Part shown: positions 23,370 to 43,691 of the stretch, piece by piece
Position numbering within the stretch: the first letter of the stretch is position 1
Layout of the letters: every line of letters begins with the position of its first letter
From: Octopus vulgaris
Lineage: Eukaryota
Direction: 5' to 3'
NCBI GenBank assembly: GCA_951406725.2
Contig: OX597815.1
Location: 189,864,001-189,926,000, forward strand
Length of the DNA: 62,000 bases
The notes under the pieces: generated by a model
The model's input: the letters and a program-made list of their open reading frames with translations, nothing else
Database searches by the model: none
What the model was told of the DNA's origin: nothing
Program-made: the position numbers and the translations under genes

Positions 23370-23410
<41 letters not shown>

Positions 23411-23445
23411 CTTAATTAAAATAAAAACATGATGCCAAGGATTCA

Positions 23446-23523
23446 GCAGTACATATGTTTCGGGCCTTTATTAGACGGATTTATAACAATGCATAATGTG
23501 TGTCTATGGCCTTCTTCAGCCGC
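23446..23523 (-). ncRNA. Type I hammerhead ribozyme motif, left arm of palindrome
   Basis: GCGG-CUGAAGA-AGGCC...GGCCC-GAAAC-AUAU-GUA-CUGC. Confidence 0.8.
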
Positions 23524-23590
23524 GCACAATTACTACCCCAAGGACGTAGAATTTTTGATGTAATACATGTCCTTGGGGTAGTAATTGTGC

Positions 23591-23668
23591 GCGGCTGAAG
23601 AAGGCCATAGACACACATTATGCATTGTTATAAATCCGTCTAATAAAGGCCCGAAACATATGTACCGC
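23591..23668 (+). ncRNA. Type I hammerhead ribozyme motif, right arm of palindrome
   Basis: GCGG-CUGAAGA-AGGCC...GGCCC-GAAAC-AUAU-GUA-CCGC; canonical core, palindromic ACAUAUGU stem III, predicted cut after 23664. Confidence 0.85.
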
Positions 23669-23851
23669 TGAATCCTTGGCATCATGTTTACTCCACCACC
23701 TACACCACCAAACGGTATATACAGGTGCTTACAATTATCAAGTACTCACCCTAAATTTCTATATATATATATATATATATATAAAGGTAGAAGAAAATGG
23801 AGATTGTGAAGTTAATAAGAGTTTATTATCAACAACAAATTGATCATTATT

Positions 23852-23930
23852 CCTTACAGCTGTTTCAATTATACACAGTGAAATTAATTAAATGTTAAGT
23901 TCATATTTCTGAGCATAATATCTTCAGAGG
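23852..23930 (-). ncRNA. Type I hammerhead ribozyme motif
   Basis: CCU-CUGAAGA-U AUUAU...AUAAU U-GAAAC-AGCU-GUA-AGG; palindromic ACAGCUGU. Confidence 0.7.
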
Positions 23931-23971
23931 GGAAAAAATATACCATTAGATGTTCTATATACTTGTTTATA

Positions 23972-33865: not shown

Positions 33866-34077
33866 GTTAGGAGGTATTGTACATTCTTAAAATAGTTATT
33901 GGCTAGAATTATCTATAATTCTCAACAAATAATTATACAATTTAAAGAAAGAAGAAAAAAATTTATCTTCACCATAGTTTCATCAATAACAGGGCAAAAA
34001 CAAATAACTAAACGCATTAACAAAAACCGAGAGCAGAGAAATAAACAAAAATATACATACATACTTATATATTCATA

Positions 34078-35826
<1,749 letters not shown>

Positions 35827-35986
35827 ATAAAATGAGATAGGGGTTGAAAATTCAACCCACCATGGGATAATATATATGGATTGAGTATCATCGGATAGTT
35901 GATGTTTTACTGATTTAAGTATGTTTCTCCATTCTCTAATTTTGTTATATATATATATATATATATGTAGATATATATATATATGT

Positions 35987-36044
<58 letters not shown>

Positions 36045-36116
36045 GTAGATATATATATATATGTAGATATATATATATATATATATATGTAGATATATAT
36101 ATATATATATATGTAG

Positions 36117-36173
<57 letters not shown>

Positions 36174-36252
36174 GATATATATATATATATTTGTAAAAAA
36201 TGAAGTTCGAAAATGCTGCTGTATTATATAATTTTTAATTTTTATATATACA

Positions 36253-36294
36253 TTATAACATGTTTCAGTTCCTGAAATGAACCTTATCAAAAAA
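36253..36294 (-). ncRNA. Hammerhead-like motif with U3-A8 core
   Basis: UUGAUAA-GGUUC AUUUCAG GAACU-GAAAC-AU-GUU; palindromic AACAUGUU; stem I weak. Confidence 0.5.
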
Positions 36295-36669
36295 AGTTAT
36301 ATATAAAAAGAGACAGCTCATGCCGTCAAACACAAGAAATTCATTTATAATACACAACGGAGTCAGACATCTTAGAGTTCATGTATAGTTGATATATAGT
36401 TCATGTATAGTTGATATATAGTTTGAAGTATATTTCAAAGTGTTCGATGCAGTGGCCCACGGTGGCGATACGTATTCAATGCAAAAAACAGATCAAAGTG
36501 GTGGAAAGCGGTCAATACAGAAGATTGATGTTTCCGAAAGAGCGAGGAATTCATTTTTACCTTAAGCAATTGTGATGACCCATGGTGGAAGTTCGCTGGG
36601 TGGTTCTAGTGATTTTTTGTGAAATGCTTGGTTTTATAATGCCTGTTAGGTGGTCAATCTAGCGTAGCG

Positions 36670-37171: not shown

Positions 37172-37840
37172 TTAGTATTCCTGGCCCAGGGTGTTTAAAC
37201 TTGGTCTAAATTTTTTTATGAAATATAGTTCTTTATTTTGGCGTTGTGTGAAGGTTGCGTTGTCACTGAATTTATAGAGCGGGTTAGTTGTAAATTTCGG
37301 ATTTACATTTCCAGCACATCTATCTATGTGTCCGCTGACCGGTATTTTGCGGTAATCAGGGTTTCTAATTTGTGATTTATGCACCGCCATCCTGTTACGT
37401 AAGCTATTTTTTGTATGGCCTATATACTGCCTATTGCAGCCTGCGCATGTTATGACGTAAATTAAGTTTTCTGATGCGCAGGTGAAGTTTGTTCTAATGG
37501 TGAACTGGTGGCCTTGTTCCAGTATAAATTCTGATCCTTCTTTCAAGATGACACAGATTCCGCAGTTGGGCCTTCCACATTTTCTAACTGCTGGTTTTGT
37601 GGTTGATGTTGAGTGCAGTGTAGCTTGGGTTAAAATCCTTTTCAAGGATTTTGGTTGCCGTTTACTTTTAATGATCGTGTGTGTTTCGAGGATCCGGTTC
37701 ATCTTTGGGTCTCCCTTTAGTAGGGCTGTGCTTTGTAGTATGGTGTTGAAGGCCTCATTGTTGAGTGGGTTGTGTGTAGAGATGTAGGGAAGGGTTTTTA
37801 ATTGTTCTTTCTTTTTTGGTTTTGTTTGTCTCAGGTCTTC
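37172..37840 (-). CDS. Penelope-like element C-terminal linker and GIY-YIG endonuclease (5'-truncated open frame)
   Basis: [64 protein letters not shown]; frame open upstream of the annotated Met to 37840, where (AT)n begins. Confidence 0.88.
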
Positions 37841-39040
<1,200 letters not shown>

Positions 39041-42000
39041 TCATCATCATCATCGTTTAGCGTCCGTTTTCCATGCTAGCATGGGTTGGACGGTTCTACT
39101 GGGGTCTGTGAAGCCAGAAGGCTTCATCAGGCCCAGTCAAATCTGGCAGTGTTTCTACGGCTGGATGCCCTTCCTAACGCCAACCACTCCGTGAGTGTAG
39201 TGGGTGCTGTTTACGTGCCACCCGCACTGGTGCCAGACAGAGCTGGCAAACGGCCACGAACGGATGGTGCTTTTTATGTGCCACCGGCACGAGGGCCAGG
39301 CAAGGCTGGCAACGGACACGAAACGGGGCGGTGCTGGCAACGGTCGCAAAACGGAAAGTTCTCTTACATGCCACCGGCACTGGTAACACATCTGCAATTT
39401 CCATTGATCGATTTCCATTGATCGATTTCGATTCTGATCCTCACTTGCCTCAACGGGTCTTCACAAGCAGAGTTTTGACATGCCACCGGCACTGGTAGCA
39501 CATCCGCAATTTCCATTGATCGATTTCGATTCTGATCCTCACTTGCCTCAACACGTCTTCACAAGTAGAGTTTTGTGTCCCAAGAAGGGAAGGTATGCAT
39601 ACGTAGGCCGGCTCCATCCCATGTAGAAGGCCACGGGTTATGGACTCACTTGTCCTGCCGGGTCTTCTCGCGCACAGCACACTTCCAGAGGTCTCGGTCT
39701 CTAGTCATTTCCTCAGTGAGACCTAAAGTTCGAAGGTCGTGCTTCACCACCTCGTCCCAGGTTTTCCTGGGTCTGCCTCTTCCACAGGTTCCCTCAACCG
39801 CTAGGGTGTGGCCCTTTTTCACACAACTATCTTCATCCATTCTCGCCACATGACCATACCAGTGCAAACGTCTCTCTTGCACACCACAACTGATGCTTCT
39901 TAGGTCCAGCTTTTCTCTCAAGGTACTTACACTCTGCCGAGTGTGAGTACCGGCATTACACATCCATCGGAGCATACTGGCTTCATTTCTAGCGAGCTTA
40001 CGCATATCCTCAGCAGTCACGGCCCATGTTTCACTGCCATGTAGCATGGCTGTTCGTACACACGCATCATACAGTCTGCCTTTCACTCTGTGCGAGAGGC
40101 CTTTTGTCACCAGCAGAGGTAAGAGCTCTCTGAACTTTGCCCAAGCTATTCTTACTCTAGCAGTTACACTTTCAGCACACCCGCCCCCGCTGCTGACTTG
40201 GTCACCTAGGTAACGGAAACTATCAACTATTTCTAGTTTTTCTCCCTGGAAAGTGACGGAAGTTGGTCTCAGAGCATTTTCAGTGTTTATTGTTCCTGAG
40301 CATCTGCCACATACAAAAACCATCTTCCTAGTTAGCCTTCCTTTGACATTGCTGCATCTCTTATGTGTCCATAGCTTACACTTGGTGCATCTTATAGAGT
40401 TTCTACCTACACCTTTTCTACAGATCGAGCAGGGCCATCTACCTGAAGGTGTTTGTGATTTGTCTACCTTCCTACTGATTACGACTTTGGTTTTAGCTAG
40501 ATTGACTCTGAGGCCCTTCGATTCTAATCCTTGTTTCCACACCTGAAACTTCTCCTCCAGTTCTGATAGCGACTCAGCAATTAGAGCAAGGTCATCAGCA
40601 TAGAGGAGCTCCCAAGGGCATCCTGTCTTGAATTCCTCCGTTATTGCCTGGAGGACTATGATAAATAGGAGGGGGCTGAGTACTGAGCCTTGGTGGACTC
40701 CTACCTCTACCCGGAATTCTTCACTGTACACATTTCCAACCCTCACCCTACTAGCGGCGTCCCTATACATGGCCCGCACAGCTCTCACTAACCATTCATC
40801 TATCCCTAGTTTCCTCATTGCCCACCAGATAAGGGATCGGGGGACCCTGTCGAAGGCTTTCTCCATGTCAACAAAAGCCAGGTACAGGGGCTTATCTTTG
40901 GCTAGGTATTTCTCCTGCAGCTGCCTTACCAGGAATATAGCATCAGTAGTACTTTTCCCTGGCACAAACCCAAACTGCATCTCATCTAAACTAACTCTCT
41001 CTCTAATTAGTTGGGCTATGACCCTCTCCGTAACCTTCATCACCTGGTCCAACAGCTTGATACCTCTGTAGTTATTTGTATCTAGGGCATCACCTTTACC
41101 TTTGTAGCAGTTGACTATTATACTGCTACACCAGTCATTGGGTATGACCCCTTTGTGTATCACCTGATTAACTATACGGGTGACTAGGCTATAGCCGACA
41201 CTACCAGACATTTTGAGCATCTCTGCAGTGATTCCTGATGGGCCTGGGGCTTTCCCTGTCTTCATGCTTCTAATTGCCTTAGCTACCACGGAACTATCAA
41301 CTCGGATAGCTGGTCCCTCTGTTGGGTCAACATTCGGCAGACTCTCTTTATCCCATTCATTTTCTTCATTCAGCAACCTTTCATAGTGGCATCTCCAAAC
41401 CTCTCTCTTTGCATCCTCATTTAGCGCAAGTGAACCATCTTCCATGCGAACACACTTCTCTCCTACCACATCACGATTCTCTCTCACACACTGTCTTGCA
41501 ACACGAAACACCTCCAGTCTTTGGTCCTCACGGCGCAGAACATTGGCAAATTTTTTCTTATCTGCTTCCCCTCTGGCTAAATAAACCTGTCTCCTAGCTT
41601 CTCTTTTGGCAGTCTGATACAATCCCCTGCTACCCCCATTTTTCCAGACCTTCCAAGCCTGTCTCTTTTCTCTAATAGCCCTGTCTACAATATTGTTCCA
41701 CCACCACGTTATTCTAGGTCGAGAGGGGACTTTGCACCAGCCACAGATCTGGTCAGTGGCTCTCAGCAGGTTGTCCCTTAGAAACGTCCAGCTGTCTTCT
41801 ACCCCCTGTGATGCTCTATCCCCTTCTACTTCGTCAGAGGCTTCAAGTAATATGTCCCTAAATCTCTGTCCATTTGCAGGATCTTTAAGCTTCCAGATCC
41901 TTCTTCTCCATATTTGTCATCTTCTGGTTGTCCTCCTAGTCCTGATCCTAAAGTCACTAACTACCAGTCTATGTTGTGGGGTACATTCTTCACCTGGGAA

Positions 42001-42446
42001 GGTTTTGGCATTTATAAGCAGCCATCTCTCCCTTTGCCTTGTAAGGATGTAGTCAATTTGGCTGGTATGTTGGCCCGATTGGTAAGTGACTAGGTGGCTG
42101 GTAGGTTTCCTGAAGTTAGTGTTGCAAATCATAAGATTATTTGCATCGCAGAACTCCAGCAGCCTGGTTCCCTCCTCGTTGCGGGAGCCATAGCCATAGC
42201 CTCCATGTATGCCATGGAAGCCCCCAGCATGTCGTCCAACGTGACCATTGAAGTCACCAGCCACAAAGATAAGGTCTCTGTCGTTCGTCAACGAGGTAGT
42301 CTGCAGTAGAGTGTCATAGAATCGGTCTTTCTGTCCATCGGGTAGCCCCGACTGAGGAGCATAGGCTGATATAATGGTTGCTAAACTATGATGAAGCACT
42401 AATCTAATCTTAAGTATTCTGTCACATACTCTGATTACCTCAATTA
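39041..42446 (-). mobile_element. RTE-clade non-LTR retrotransposon, 5'-truncated, young
   Basis: APE fragment, RT, structured 3' UTR and (GAT)n tail; candidate 21-bp TSD ATATATATATATCTACATATA at 39020-39040 and 42447-42467. Confidence 0.93.
39646..42441 (-). pseudogene. RTE ORF2 (endonuclease-reverse transcriptase) with one in-frame TGA at 41917-41919
   Basis: APE motifs [27 protein letters not shown]; RT motifs NYRGIKL, FVDMEKAFD, GVHQGSVLSPLLF, LLYADDL; 41916-41623 is exactly 98 in-frame codons joining the two annotated ORFs. Confidence 0.92.
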
Positions 42447-42459
42447 ATATATATATATC

Positions 42460-42523
<64 letters not shown>

Positions 42524-42880
42524 GATAGATATATATATATATATATGTAGATATATATATATATATATGTAGATATATATATATATATGTAGATAGATAT
42601 ATATATATATGTAGATAGATATATATATATATATGTAGATAGATATATATATATATAGATAGATATATATATATATATGTAGATAGATATATATATATGT
42701 AGATAGATATATATATATGTAGATAGATATATATATATGTAGATAGATATATATATATGTAGATAGATATATATATATATGTAGATAGATATATATATAT
42801 ATAGATATATATATGTAGATATATATATATATATAGATATATATATGTAGATATATATATATATATAGATATATATATGT

Positions 42881-42915
<35 letters not shown>

Positions 42916-43030
42916 GATAGATATATATATATATATATATGTAGATAGATAGATACATATATATGTAGAGATATATATATATATAGATAGATAGATACTC
43001 ACATACATACATACATACGTACATATTATA
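42447..43030. repeat. Compound (AT)n/GTAGATAG microsatellite
   Basis: Directly visible. Confidence 0.97.
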
Positions 43031-43691
43031 TATCCATATATAAACTCAATTAATTTGAGCAAATGCTTTGCGACAAATATTTTTGCCCAGAAATAAACAG
43101 AAATAATGCAGACAACATCCAAATAAGAATACAAACAAGCGAGCAAAATATATAATGAGACTATACAGTGGAACGGCAATCCTGCACATATAAATGTAGA
43201 CAATGTAAGACATAGCTGAATTCAAAAATATACAATATCTCGTCTCAGTTATTAACAGAGTTCAGAAAAGACAAAAATAATCAAAGAAACAAAACCAAGA
43301 TTAACTATCTTAGAAGTAATCACCGACTCGATGTTCAGCCAAAGTAAAAGAAACTATGCTTCTGATATGCTATAAATATAGCAGACATTTCCTAGACTAT
43401 GTCAATTTTGGTTCATGCCCACATTACAAACTGTGGCTTATAAATCAAAACAAACTACAAATATTTCAAAATCACACTATGAATTATGATAAGCTGTGTG
43501 TTGTACTACAGCAGACACTGACCACCAAATGCATATTATTGCAGTGTAGGAGAAAGCCTTGTCAATATATTTATTTAACCAGTCACACTTTGGGATTATT
43601 TGCTGTCAATGCAGGCCTTCCAAGTTCCCTATATTTCTGGATTATATCTTATTAAAGTTCACCTCTCTCTCTCTCTCCCTCTCCATTTCCT

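What the first reader, a model, noticed from the sequence alone, without database searches (positions are those of the whole stretch)
23425..23689. 265-bp palindrome carrying two divergent, canonical hammerheads
Seen: near-perfect arms (23425-23545 and 23569-23689) each hold GCGG-CUGAAGA...GAAAC-AUAU-GUA-C(C/U)GC reading outward. The one arm difference in stem I (CCGC vs CUGC) still pairs by G-U. Both outer ends run into (AT)n. Inference: a single integration produced an inverted duplication. A transcript from either strand would contain one ribozyme and its antisense, so the long hairpin would compete with ribozyme folding. That could act as an off-switch and make a dsRNA substrate for siRNA or ADAR pathways.
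Basis: partly seen in the sequence, partly recalled or inferred. Interest (0 to 1): 0.75.

Follow-up and report, generated by a model that had tools for sequence, protein, structure and literature searches.

The report
Penelope-like retrotransposon inverted insertion with hammerheads
The 265-bp palindrome is real, but it is the ordinary footprint of a young, high-copy Penelope-like retrotransposon that lands in (TA)n repeats as two head-to-head truncated copies, each carrying the weak, dimer-type hammerhead motif typical of these elements.

Summary
The arms are 23425-23545 and 23569-23689, 120/121 complementary, with a 23-nt spacer. Each carries an outward-reading type-I hammerhead (HHR) motif.

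It is not a stand-alone ribozyme device. The arm belongs to a repeat family with over 1,300 candidate copies, the best-scoring 98-100% identical, in this 2.8-Gb genome. Longer copies run into an ~842-aa ORF. Its modelled fold matches telomerase reverse transcriptase best, and its C-terminus has GIY-YIG motifs. That is a canonical Penelope-like element (PLE).

The window holds one composite insertion, 23410-23759, in a (TA)n microsatellite:
- an untailed 5'-truncated copy on the minus strand;
- a 25-nt-longer copy on the plus strand, whose extra 23 nt are the "spacer";
- a 70-nt "tail" on one side only.

Seventeen head-to-head pairs with different breakpoints occur elsewhere, and 16 have exactly one tailed end. 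This matches published PLE architecture, and opposite-strand HHR pairs were reported in 2014.

The HHR is the PLE minimal type, not a canonical one:
- 4-bp helix I;
- 2-bp helix III with a palindromic loop that allows dimers;
- a long helix II;
- no Rfam hit.

A read-through transcript would fold into a hairpin of about -240 kcal/mol. The off-switch, siRNA and ADAR ideas remain untested. Verdict: a new member of a known kind, of low to moderate interest.

The parts
23373..23409 (.). (TA)n microsatellite flanking the insertion on the left (target)
   Evidence: Read directly. Almost every copy of the family, tailed or not, abuts (TA)n.
23410..23545 (-). Untailed, 5'-truncated copy of the PLE 3' region. 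The 3' end is at 23410 and the 5' end at 23545. It contains the left palindrome arm.
   Evidence: blastn against a long family copy covers 23545-23412 at 96%. The 3' end, GTTTTTATTTTAATTAAGT, differs at 2 positions from the family end GTTTTTATTTTGATTAAT.
23446..23523 (-). Hammerhead motif of the left copy (CUGC variant in helix I). The predicted cleavage site lies after the A complementary to 23450.
   Evidence: Descriptor scan. Sequence read directly.
23544..23545 (.). Inner junction of the two copies, with a 2-nt overlap (AC) shared by both
   Evidence: The blastn ends of the two copies overlap by 2 nt.
23544..23689 (+). Tailed, 5'-truncated copy of the PLE 3' region. It contains the 23-nt spacer (23546-23568) and the right palindrome arm.
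   Evidence: blastn covers 23544-23689 at 98%. The spacer is contiguous family sequence in all longer copies.
23591..23668 (+). Hammerhead motif of the right copy. Core CUGAAGA is at 23595-23601 and GAAAC at 23653-23657. Predicted cleavage is between 23664 and 23665.
   Evidence: Descriptor scan. The MFE of the isolated 78 nt is the three-way junction; a dimer forms through ACAUAUGU.
23690..23759 (+). PLE tail, an AC-rich extension present at one end only. In this copy 16 nt (TTATTTTGATTAATTT) are missing between body and tail.
   Evidence: The tail matches 47 places and always follows the family's 3' end. Its continuation maps to the start of the 842-aa open frames.
23760..23783 (.). (TA)n microsatellite flanking the insertion on the right
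   Evidence: Read directly.
23784..23935 (-). 3' end of a second, older PLE-like family (F2). It has its own hammerhead-like motif at 23852-23930 (-) and abuts the same (TA)n. The 5' limit was not determined.
   Evidence: Relaxed descriptor hit. There are 1,126 first-look candidates; those scored are about 84-93% identical, and several sit in head-to-head pairs. Fold.

Best explanation
The palindrome is a single composite insertion of a young Penelope-like retrotransposon (PLE: telomerase-like RT plus a C-terminal GIY-YIG endonuclease) into a (TA)n microsatellite.

**What is shown.**
- The insertion is two 5'-truncated copies of the element's 3' region joined head to head, with 3' ends pointing outward.
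- One copy ends at the proximal 3' end (GATTAAT). The other continues through a 70-72-nt AC-rich tail.
- The hammerhead motif lies 35 nt upstream of the proximal end. In the unit it sits just upstream of the ORF start, which is the pLTR position.

**What is inferred from published PLE biochemistry.**
- The PLE protein nicks both strands of AT-rich target DNA and extends both.
- It starts reverse transcription at two internal sites on the RNA. The sequence between them is the tail.

**What is inferred from this family.** The arm lengths within a pair are nearly equal and the central loops are 22-34 nt. This suggests the second arm is often made by fold-back (snap-back) copying of the nascent cDNA, or by an equivalent template switch. 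Joining uses 1-8 nt of microhomology.

**The hammerhead.** It is the PLE minimal type I form. It can form an active-like fold only weakly as a monomer, and better as a dimer through its palindromic helix III/loop 3. Its likely role is processing multimeric PLE transcripts.

**In this palindrome.** The sense ribozyme would be sequestered in a 121-bp hairpin. This is a by-product of insertion, not a switch.
For: **A dispersed repeat, not a unique structure.** There are 1,376 first-look candidates for the arm; the 46 scored are 98-100% identical.

**Fixed 3' end, variable 5' end.** The 3' end is constant and followed by (TA)n. The 5' ends vary.

**Link to the coding element.** Longer copies are contiguous with an ORF (L064, L066). 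Open frames reach 842-936 aa, with over 20,000 first-look candidates.

**RT.** The ORF has DKT, FDI..FY.SIS, MGS and YRDD motifs. The best fold matches of its AF2 model are TERT (3du5_A, E 2.8e-10), followed by other RTs.

**Endonuclease.** The C-terminal domain's top fold hits are the GIY-YIG nucleases I-TevI and T4 EndoII, but weakly (E 0.28, TM 0.63). Invariant Y, Y-G, R, H, E and N columns are present. One homologue is named a GIY-YIG endonuclease by JGI.

**Tail.** Tails are 72, about 83, or about 156-160 nt, always after GATTAAT. The tail's continuation lies at the start of the open frame, about 2,545 nt upstream of the stop, at 10 or more loci.

**Pairs.** Adjacent copies are 17 head-to-head, 1 tail-to-tail and 0 tandem. 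16 of 17 head-to-head pairs have exactly one tail. Every pair has different breakpoints, with 1-8 nt overlaps or short fillers. Arm lengths are correlated: 9 of 14 pairs differ by 35 nt or less, against 2.0 expected.

**Hammerhead.** The descriptor gives 2 hits against 0.005 expected. The MFE of the isolated 78-nt segment is the HHR junction; the dimer is -34.8 against 2 x -11.5 kcal/mol. A second family (F2) has the same architecture with different helices.

**Literature.** PMC8557442 describes the adjacent inverted 5'-truncated copy, the tail at one end, (TA)n targets and the HHR in pLTRs. PMC4209133 describes PLE minimal HHRs, including opposite-strand pairs 100-700 bp apart. PMC11167929 shows both strands extended, two RT start sites that define the tail, and an AC-rich start region.
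Against: - No Rfam hammerhead model matches.
- Sequence-only searches of the ORF found no RT or GIY-YIG hit in NCBIfam, PHROGs or PDB.
- The GIY-YIG fold match is not statistically significant.
- Self-cleavage is untested. Published PLE minimal HHRs cleave poorly, and HHR mutants did not affect insertion in vitro (PMC4209133, PMC11167929).
- Copies are too similar to test covariation within the family.
- In vitro, the two RT start sites showed no strand preference (PMC11167929). The strict one-tail-per-pair rule is therefore not fully explained.
- I did not see a full-length copy with the upstream pLTR directly.
Confidence: 0.88

Rival explanations
1. The element first inserted as a much longer, or full-length, perfect head-to-head palindrome. 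The centre was later deleted by hairpin or cruciform processing and end joining, leaving short near-equal arms with a small spacer.
For: Arm lengths within pairs are correlated, and junctions carry microhomology or fillers, as end joining would leave. Long palindromes with 2.2-kb arms do exist (L064).
Against: Single copies show the same broad spectrum of 5' truncations, so truncation at insertion is common anyway. The shortest pairs repeatedly have 22-34-nt loops. That fits a snap-back geometry better than random deletion. The two routes cannot be separated with these data.
Confidence: 0.2
2. A foldback or MITE-type DNA transposon, or a hairpin RNA or miRNA gene, whose arms happen to contain hammerhead-like words.
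For: Hairpin-shaped miRNA models score on the region: MIR7993 at 67.5 bits and mir-2733 at 42 bits, all below their gathering scores. The outer ends are constant.
Against: The inner ends vary from pair to pair. About two thirds of unique copies have no inverted partner within 1.4 kb. Arms are colinear with the 3' region of an RT-EN element. The two outer ends are not equivalent, because the tail is on one side only. The miRNA hits reflect only the perfect hairpin shape.
Confidence: 0.02
3. A fold-back assembly or sequencing artefact, such as a chimeric long read.
For: Palindromes with short loops are a known artefact class. Craig et al. note that PLE structures cause assembly problems (PMC8557442).
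Against: The two sides differ. One has a tail and the other does not. There is a 16-nt deletion on one side, 2 substitutions at the left 3' end and 1 arm mismatch. The same architecture recurs at 17 or more loci on many chromosomes, each with unique flanks and different breakpoints.
Confidence: 0.03
4. The hammerhead-like motif is a non-functional relic or a chance match. The element's RNA is never cleaved there.
For: There is no Rfam hit. Helix I has only 4 bp and helix III only 2 bp, and the 10.1/11.1 register is irregular. At 0.005 chance hits per 62 kb, a 2.8-Gb genome would hold a few hundred chance matches. Published PLE HHRs have low activity and are dispensable for insertion in vitro (PMC4209133, PMC11167929).
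Against: The motif sits where PLE HHRs are known to sit. It shows three features that the 2014 paper lists as emerging beyond its own search descriptor: an extra nucleotide after position 9, a palindromic 15.2-loop3-16.2, and a long helix II. The isolated 78 nt folds into the HHR junction as its MFE. An independent family (F2) keeps the core and architecture with different helix sequences.
Confidence: 0.3

Closest known systems
Penelope-like elements (canonical EN+ PLEs: Penelope/Poseidon, Neptune, Nematis). Insertion architecture as described by Evgen'ev & Arkhipova 2005 and Craig et al. 2021 (PMC8557442).
   Same: Telomerase-like RT plus a C-terminal GIY-YIG-type domain. Heavy 5' truncation. 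An adjacent inverted 5'-truncated copy. A tail at one end only. (TA)n targets. A hammerhead in the repeat next to the ORF start.
   Different: The tail is 72 nt, with longer 83- and about 160-nt versions, against the 30-40 nt usually quoted. No direct tandem (pLTR) arrangement was seen in my sample, which was chosen by similarity to the arm. The clade within PLEs was not determined; there is a Cys-rich block before the GIY-YIG motif.
PLE minimal hammerheads (Cervera & de la Pena 2014, PMC4209133)
   Same: Type I. Helix I of 4 bp. [quoted passage not shown] An enlarged helix II. A 1-2-bp helix III with a palindromic loop that permits dimers. Motifs mostly solitary. Pairs on opposite strands 100-700 bp apart were already noted.
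   Different: Helix II is about 50 nt here, interrupted (4 bp + 5 bp + 5 bp), rather than 7-8 bp. The G10.1-C11.1 register is ambiguous.
Poseidon PAc in-vitro system (Frangieh et al. 2024, PMC11167929)
   Same: Both target strands are nicked and extended. There are two internal RT start sites whose interval is the tail. The start region is AC-rich and the targets are AT-rich.
   Different: In vitro there was no strand preference for start site. Here 16 of 17 pairs carry exactly one tail. Near-equal arm lengths are not predicted by two independent extensions.
Animal non-LTR retrozymes (Cervera & de la Pena 2020, PMC7229834; Li et al. 2026 bioRxiv 10.64898/2026.07.22.740005)
   Same: Type I dimer-type hammerheads derived from or related to PLE pLTRs. 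Non-autonomous short copies.
   Different: Retrozymes are head-to-tail tandem arrays that give circular RNAs. Here there were 0 tandem and 17 head-to-head arrangements.
LINE-1 twin-priming inversions
   Same: Use of both target 3'-OH ends. Microhomology at the internal junction.
   Different: Twin priming inverts a different, upstream segment of one RNA. Here the same 3' segment is duplicated in inverted orientation.
Inverted Alu pairs and palindromic Harbinger repeats as ADAR substrates (Porath et al. 2017, PMC5625713)
   Same: Would give long near-perfect dsRNA if transcribed. Penelope is reported there as massively edited in lizard.
   Different: No expression or editing data were examined for this locus or family.

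Membership tests
Hammerhead ribozyme, type I (PLE minimal type) | Catalytic core: C3-U-G-A-N-G-A9, G12-A-A14, A15.1-U16.1 and a non-G at position 17 | tested here: met
   CUGAAGA ... GAAA-C-AUAU-G-U-A in both arms.
Hammerhead ribozyme, type I (PLE minimal type) | Three helices around the core, with helix I open-ended | tested here: met
   The MFE of the isolated 78 nt is exactly this junction: helix I 4 bp, helix II 4+5+5 bp, helix III 2 bp, at -11.5 kcal/mol. In the 91-nt context the z-score is 0.72, no better than shuffles.
Hammerhead ribozyme, type I (PLE minimal type) | [quoted passage not shown] | tested here: met
   An A follows CUGAAGA in this family, and a U does so in family F2.
Hammerhead ribozyme, type I (PLE minimal type) | Conserved G10.1-C11.1 pair | tested here: inconclusive
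   Two registers are possible. One has an A.C mismatch followed by GGCC/GGCC. The other has G-C, G-C with a bulged C. They cannot be told apart.
Hammerhead ribozyme, type I (PLE minimal type) | Palindromic 15.2-loop3-16.2, allowing a dimeric ribozyme | tested here: met
   ACAUAUGU is self-complementary. The cofold dimer forms an 8-bp helix III at -34.8 against -23.0 kcal/mol for two monomers. F2 has ACAGCUGU.
Hammerhead ribozyme, type I (PLE minimal type) | Match to curated covariance models (Rfam Hammerhead_1 and the other hammerhead families) | tested here: not met
   No hit at gathering score, or at E<=10, on 62 kb, 501 nt or 101 nt.
Hammerhead ribozyme, type I (PLE minimal type) | Compensatory changes in helices among relatives | tested here: inconclusive
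   Copies are 98-100% identical. Only F1 against F2 could be compared. They share the core and architecture but have different helices I and II and a different loop 3. Further loci could not be fetched.
Hammerhead ribozyme, type I (PLE minimal type) | Site-specific self-cleavage | not testable with these tools
   Needs transcription and cleavage assays or RNA-end mapping.
Penelope-like element (EN+) | Reverse transcriptase most similar to telomerase RT | tested here: met
   The AF2 model has pLDDT 79. The top PDB fold hits are TERT (3du5_A E 2.8e-10; 6usr_A), followed by DRT, retron, LINE-1 and group II RTs. RT motifs are seen in the sequence.
Penelope-like element (EN+) | GIY-YIG endonuclease domain fused to the RT | tested here: inconclusive
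   VIYSCEV...YIGCST...R..NH...E...N are invariant across 30 homologues. The top fold hits are I-TevI and T4 EndoII, with UvrC GIY-YIG lower in the list, but the best E is 0.28. JGI gives one homologue that name. PDB, NCBIfam and PHROGs sequence searches were negative.
Penelope-like element (EN+) | Insertions 5'-truncated, with an adjacent inverted 5'-truncated copy | tested here: met
   17 head-to-head pairs with different breakpoints.
Penelope-like element (EN+) | Tail extension present at only one end of the insertion unit | tested here: met
   16 of 17 pairs have exactly one tail, including the window's pair.
Penelope-like element (EN+) | Hammerhead located in the repeat (pLTR) next to the ORF start | tested here: met
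   HHR, GATTAAT, tail and tail extension are contiguous in L014 and L052. The extension maps to the start of the 842-aa open frames at 10 or more loci.
Penelope-like element (EN+) | Direct partial tandem (pLTR-ORF-pLTR) | not tested
   No full-length copy with its upstream flank could be fetched. There were 0 tandem pairs among the 3'-end copies sampled.
Non-LTR retrozyme | Head-to-tail tandem repeats of 170-400 nt, each with a hammerhead | tested here: not met
   0 tandem arrangements among 18 adjacent pairs.
Foldback or MITE DNA transposon | Terminal inverted repeats of fixed extent with equivalent ends | tested here: not met
   Inner limits vary from 78 to over 2,200 nt. The outer ends are non-equivalent, tailed against untailed. 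About two thirds of unique copies have no inverted partner within 1.4 kb.

The most novel reading that the evidence does not exclude
PLE head-to-head insertions in this genome are mostly near-symmetric hairpins: arm lengths within 35 nt of each other, 22-34-nt loops, and exactly one tail. This suggests the PLE RT often makes the second arm by snapping back on its own nascent cDNA, rather than by an independent second priming. With thousands of such young, near-perfect palindromes, PLEs could be a main reason why octopus-like genomes have an unusually high density of loci able to form long perfect dsRNA, and so of ADAR hyper-editing substrates.
Probability: 0.3. Interest if true: 0.55.

Novelty: new member of a known kind. 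Interest (0 to 1): 0.27.

Why it matters
For annotation, these palindromes should be masked as PLE insertions. They should not be called ribozyme genes, miRNA hairpins or MITEs.

For PLE biology, the family is a clean, young natural data set, with hundreds to thousands of copies of which the best-scoring are 98-100% identical. Three features constrain the still unresolved second half of PLE integration:
- one tail per pair;
- correlated arm lengths;
- microhomology at the junctions.

For cephalopod RNA biology, the family is a candidate source of perfect dsRNA. None of this changes the general picture. Opposite-strand PLE hammerhead pairs and the inverted-copy-plus-tail architecture are already published.

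Tried and rejected
- **Rfam.** Searched at gathering score and at E<=10 on three region sizes. No hammerhead hit. Only sub-threshold miRNA-shaped hits caused by the perfect hairpin, which I rejected.
- **Folding.** Folding the 91-nt arm core alone gave no special stability (z 0.72). Only the exact 78-nt motif folds as the hammerhead junction.
- **ORFs near the palindrome.** ORFs of 100 aa or more in 14-33 kb were listed without translation and not examined further. A later tblastn of the PLE ORF against the whole window found nothing.
- **Sequence-only identification of the ORF.** NCBIfam, PHROGs, PDB phmmer and a PDB profile search all gave nothing. Fold comparison was needed.
- **LINE ORFs in L065.** LINE-type RT ORFs lie between the arms. 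They were set aside on motif inspection alone as an unrelated nested or adjacent LINE.
- **Arm identity within pairs.** Arms of a pair are only slightly more alike than arms of different pairs, about 97.4% against 95.9% over 400 nt. The family is too young for this to be decisive.
- **Other hammerhead-like hits.** F3-F5 in other loci and three hits in the window came from a relaxed descriptor. They are not followed by (TA)n and were not pursued.

Full report
**1. The observation**

The inverted repeat is exactly as described. The arms are 23425-23545 and 23569-23689, 121 nt each, 99% complementary, 23 nt apart. The sequence shows in each arm, reading outward:

GCGG / CUGAAGA / A / GGCC...(about 40 nt)...GGCC / C / GAAAC-AUAU-GUA / CCGC

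The left copy has CUGC instead of CCGC.

I wrote a type-I hammerhead (HHR) descriptor with these requirements:
- 4-bp helix I;
- the core boxes;
- helix II of 4 bp or more;
- a self-complementary helix III/loop 3;
- U followed by a non-G.

It finds only these two sites in the 62-kb window, against 0.005 per shuffled window. The descriptor was written after seeing the motif. At that rate a 2.8-Gb genome would hold a few hundred chance matches, so the motif alone proves little.

No Rfam hammerhead model matches. This holds at gathering score on the window, at E<=10 on 501 nt, and at E<=10 on 101 nt. Only sub-threshold miRNA hairpin models respond to the perfect hairpin. "Canonical" is therefore the wrong word.

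**2. It is a repeat family**

The arm has 1,376 first-look candidates in the window's own genome (2.8 Gb, 227 contigs). The 46 that were scored are 98-100% identical.

Aligning 30 loci shows three things:
- a fixed 3' end, ...GGCATCATGTTTTTATTTTGATTAAT, followed by (TA)n;
- gradually disappearing 5' homology, which is 5' truncation;
- in about half of the copies, an extra 72-nt segment between GATTAAT and (TA)n. It starts with an AC-rich run: TTACTCCACCACCTACACCACC...CCCTGAATTTC.

The tail can also be about 83 or about 156-160 nt long. It always continues the same sequence.

**3. What the family is**

Longer copies extend 1 kb (L033), 2.2 kb (L064) and 3.5 kb (L066) upstream of the 3' end. They run into an ORF whose C-terminus carries a Cys-rich block and GIY...YIG-like motifs. 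That ORF piece has over 20,000 first-look candidates in the genome, with open frames up to 842-936 aa.

A 767-aa stretch (L075) shows the PLE-type DKT/G motif and the RT motifs FDI..FY.SIS, MGS and YRDD. Its homologues are 29-44% identical. They include proteins of the octopod Argonauta hians, and one that JGI names a GIY-YIG endonuclease.

Sequence-only searches failed: NCBIfam, PHROGs, PDB phmmer and a PDB profile. Fold comparison was more informative:
- An AlphaFold model built on a 31-sequence alignment (pLDDT 79) has telomerase RT as its best PDB matches (3du5_A, E 2.8e-10). DRT, retron, LINE-1 and group II RTs follow.
- The C-terminal domain model (pLDDT 86) has I-TevI and T4 EndoII as top hits, with UvrC GIY-YIG further down the list. 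The best E-value is a non-significant 0.28, with TM 0.63.
- The invariant Y, Y-G, R, H, E and N columns are the GIY-YIG hallmark residues. That reading rests on established knowledge of the superfamily.

Together this is a canonical EN+ Penelope-like element (PLE).

**4. Where the hammerhead sits in the unit**

In L014 and L052 the order is HHR, GATTAAT, tail, then a further 90 nt. That further sequence maps at the very start of the 842-aa open frames, about 2,545 nt upstream of the stop codon, at 10 or more loci (one search compared).

So the HHR segment lies immediately upstream of the ORF in the repeating unit. That is the pLTR position where PLE hammerheads are known to be (PMC4209133, PMC11167929).

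**5. Anatomy of the window locus**

blastn against a long copy gives a plus-strand copy at 23544-23689 and a minus-strand copy at 23545-23412.
- The 23-nt "spacer" is simply the extra 5' sequence of the longer right-hand copy.
- The two copies overlap by 2 nt (AC).
- The left copy ends at 23410 without a tail and meets the (TA)n at 23373-23409.
- The right copy continues through the tail (23690-23759) to the (TA)n at 23760-23783. It lacks 16 nt (TTATTTTGATTAATTT) that all other tailed copies have.
- The single arm mismatch (23448 against 23666) is a CpG to TpG change relative to the family consensus.

**6. The inverted form is recurrent**

Among the loci held, adjacent copies are 17 head-to-head, 1 tail-to-tail and 0 tandem. 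Ten of the pairs are visible already among the 46 best arm hits.

16 of 17 head-to-head pairs have exactly one tailed end, and none has two. Each pair has different 5' breakpoints, joined by 1-8 nt overlaps or 1-24 nt fillers, with one 204-nt filler of element-derived sequence.

This matches the published description of PLE insertions (PMC8557442):
- an inverted 5'-truncated copy adjacent;
- a tail often at one end only;
- (TA)n as the preferred target;
- the HHR in the pLTR.

Cervera and de la Pena (PMC4209133) already reported pairs of PLE minimal hammerheads 100-700 bp apart on opposite strands. Frangieh et al. (PMC11167929) showed in vitro that a PLE protein nicks and extends both target strands. 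They also showed that it starts reverse transcription at two internal RNA sites, and that the interval between the sites is the tail.

Its proposed refutation, that homologues are never inverted, fails. An assembly fold-back is unlikely given the asymmetries between the two sides and the recurrence at unique loci.

**7. The ribozyme**

The motif has three features that the 2014 paper lists as emerging beyond its own search descriptor:
- an extra nucleotide after position 9;
- a palindromic 15.2-loop3-16.2 (ACAUAUGU);
- a long helix II.

The G10.1-C11.1 register is ambiguous.

Folded alone, the 78-nt segment takes the three-way junction as its MFE, at -11.5 kcal/mol. Two copies cofold through an 8-bp helix III at -34.8 kcal/mol. 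This fits the dimer model.

An independent, older family (F2) lies at window 23784 to at least 23935 on the minus strand. It has 1,126 first-look candidates; those scored are about 84-93% identical, and several are also in head-to-head pairs. It keeps CUGAAGA, an extra nucleotide, a roughly 50-nt helix II and GAAAC-AGCU-GUA, but with different helix sequences. It also ends 68 nt further on at the same (TA)n. That is suggestive covariation, but it rests on only two families.

Activity was not tested. Published PLE minimal hammerheads cleave poorly, and core mutants did not affect insertion in vitro.

**8.

A transcript through the whole composite would fold into the long hairpin at -240 kcal/mol. 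It would contain one sense motif and one antisense motif. No dimeric ribozyme could form, so the sense motif would be sequestered.

That part is sound physics. It describes a consequence of an insertion by-product, not a switch.

The dsRNA idea is reasonable in context. Porath et al. (PMC5625713) found octopus to have an exceptional density of loci able to form long near-perfect dsRNA and the strongest hyper-editing signal. They also found Penelope to be the one massively edited "LINE" in lizard. No expression or editing data were available here.

**9. Something beyond the textbook picture**

Arm lengths within pairs are strongly correlated. Spearman's rho is 0.77. Nine of 14 pairs differ by 35 nt or less, against 2.0 expected (permutation P < 5e-5). 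The five shortest pairs have length differences of 22-34 nt.

Two independent primings would not give this. Fold-back copying of the nascent cDNA would. So would symmetric deletion of the centre of longer palindromes. The loci were chosen by similarity to the arm, so some ascertainment bias is possible.

**10. Verdict**

The object is a typical insertion of a young PLE family, probably in an octopod genome. That guess rests on genome size, the Argonauta homologues and published PLE activity in Octopus (PMC13282606). It is a new member of a known kind, of low to moderate interest.

Noticed in passing
window 23784-23935 (-), possibly to about 23960: The 3' end of a second, older PLE-like family (F2). 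Its own hammerhead-like motif is at 23852-23930 (-): CCU CUGAAGA U AUUAUGC...GUAUAAU U GAAAC AGCU GUA AGG. It ends at the same (TA)n as the palindrome. There are 1,126 first-look candidates; those scored are about 84-93% identical, and several are in head-to-head pairs. The (TA)n tract was hit at least twice.
   Followed up: partly
loci L001-L067 (pairs listed): Arm lengths within head-to-head pairs are correlated. Nine of 14 pairs differ by 35 nt or less, and the shortest pairs have 22-34-nt loops. Junctions show 1-8 nt overlaps or short fillers, some of them element-derived. This suggests snap-back synthesis or symmetric centre deletion.
   Followed up: partly
window 37175-37768 (-), with about 36251-36295 (-): A third PLE-like fragment. 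Its ORF tail has a GIY..YIG block that aligns to the PLE profile (hhalign E 8e-5). It is flanked by kilobase-long (TA)n tracts at 33.9-36.2 kb and 37.8-38.7 kb. A possible U3-A8 core-variant hammerhead (UUGAUAA ... GAAAC-AU-GUU) lies near its 3' end and was not tested.
   Followed up: partly
window 39646-43221 (-): Long ORFs of 756 aa and 434 aa. They carry LINE-type reverse-transcriptase motifs and a putative N-terminal endonuclease region, judged by eye. This is an unrelated non-LTR retrotransposon.
   Followed up: no
window 23448 and 23666: The only arm mismatch is a CpG to TpG change in the left copy relative to the family consensus CCGC. The retained G-U pair is probably coincidental.
   Followed up: yes
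window 23689/23690: The right copy lacks 16 nt (TTATTTTGATTAATTT) between body and tail. All other tailed copies have them. The deletion is bounded by short T runs.
   Followed up: partly
untailed 3' ends in L026, L042, L043, L058 and L062: Untailed ends stop at slightly different points inside the AT-rich ...TTTTATTTTGATTAAT before (TA)n. Tailed ends stop at discrete sites (+72, +83, about +156-160). The untailed junction may form by annealing to the (TA)n target.
   Followed up: no
L065:2708-4983 (-): LINE-type RT ORFs of 381 and 404 aa lie between two 834-bp inverted PLE arms. This is a nested or neighbouring LINE, not part of the PLE.
   Followed up: no
window 33900-36230, 37830-38740 and 42400-43050: Very long (TA)n/(TG)n-type microsatellite tracts dominate the window. 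The region is repeat-rich, and no convincing host exon was seen among ORFs of 180 aa or more.
   Followed up: no
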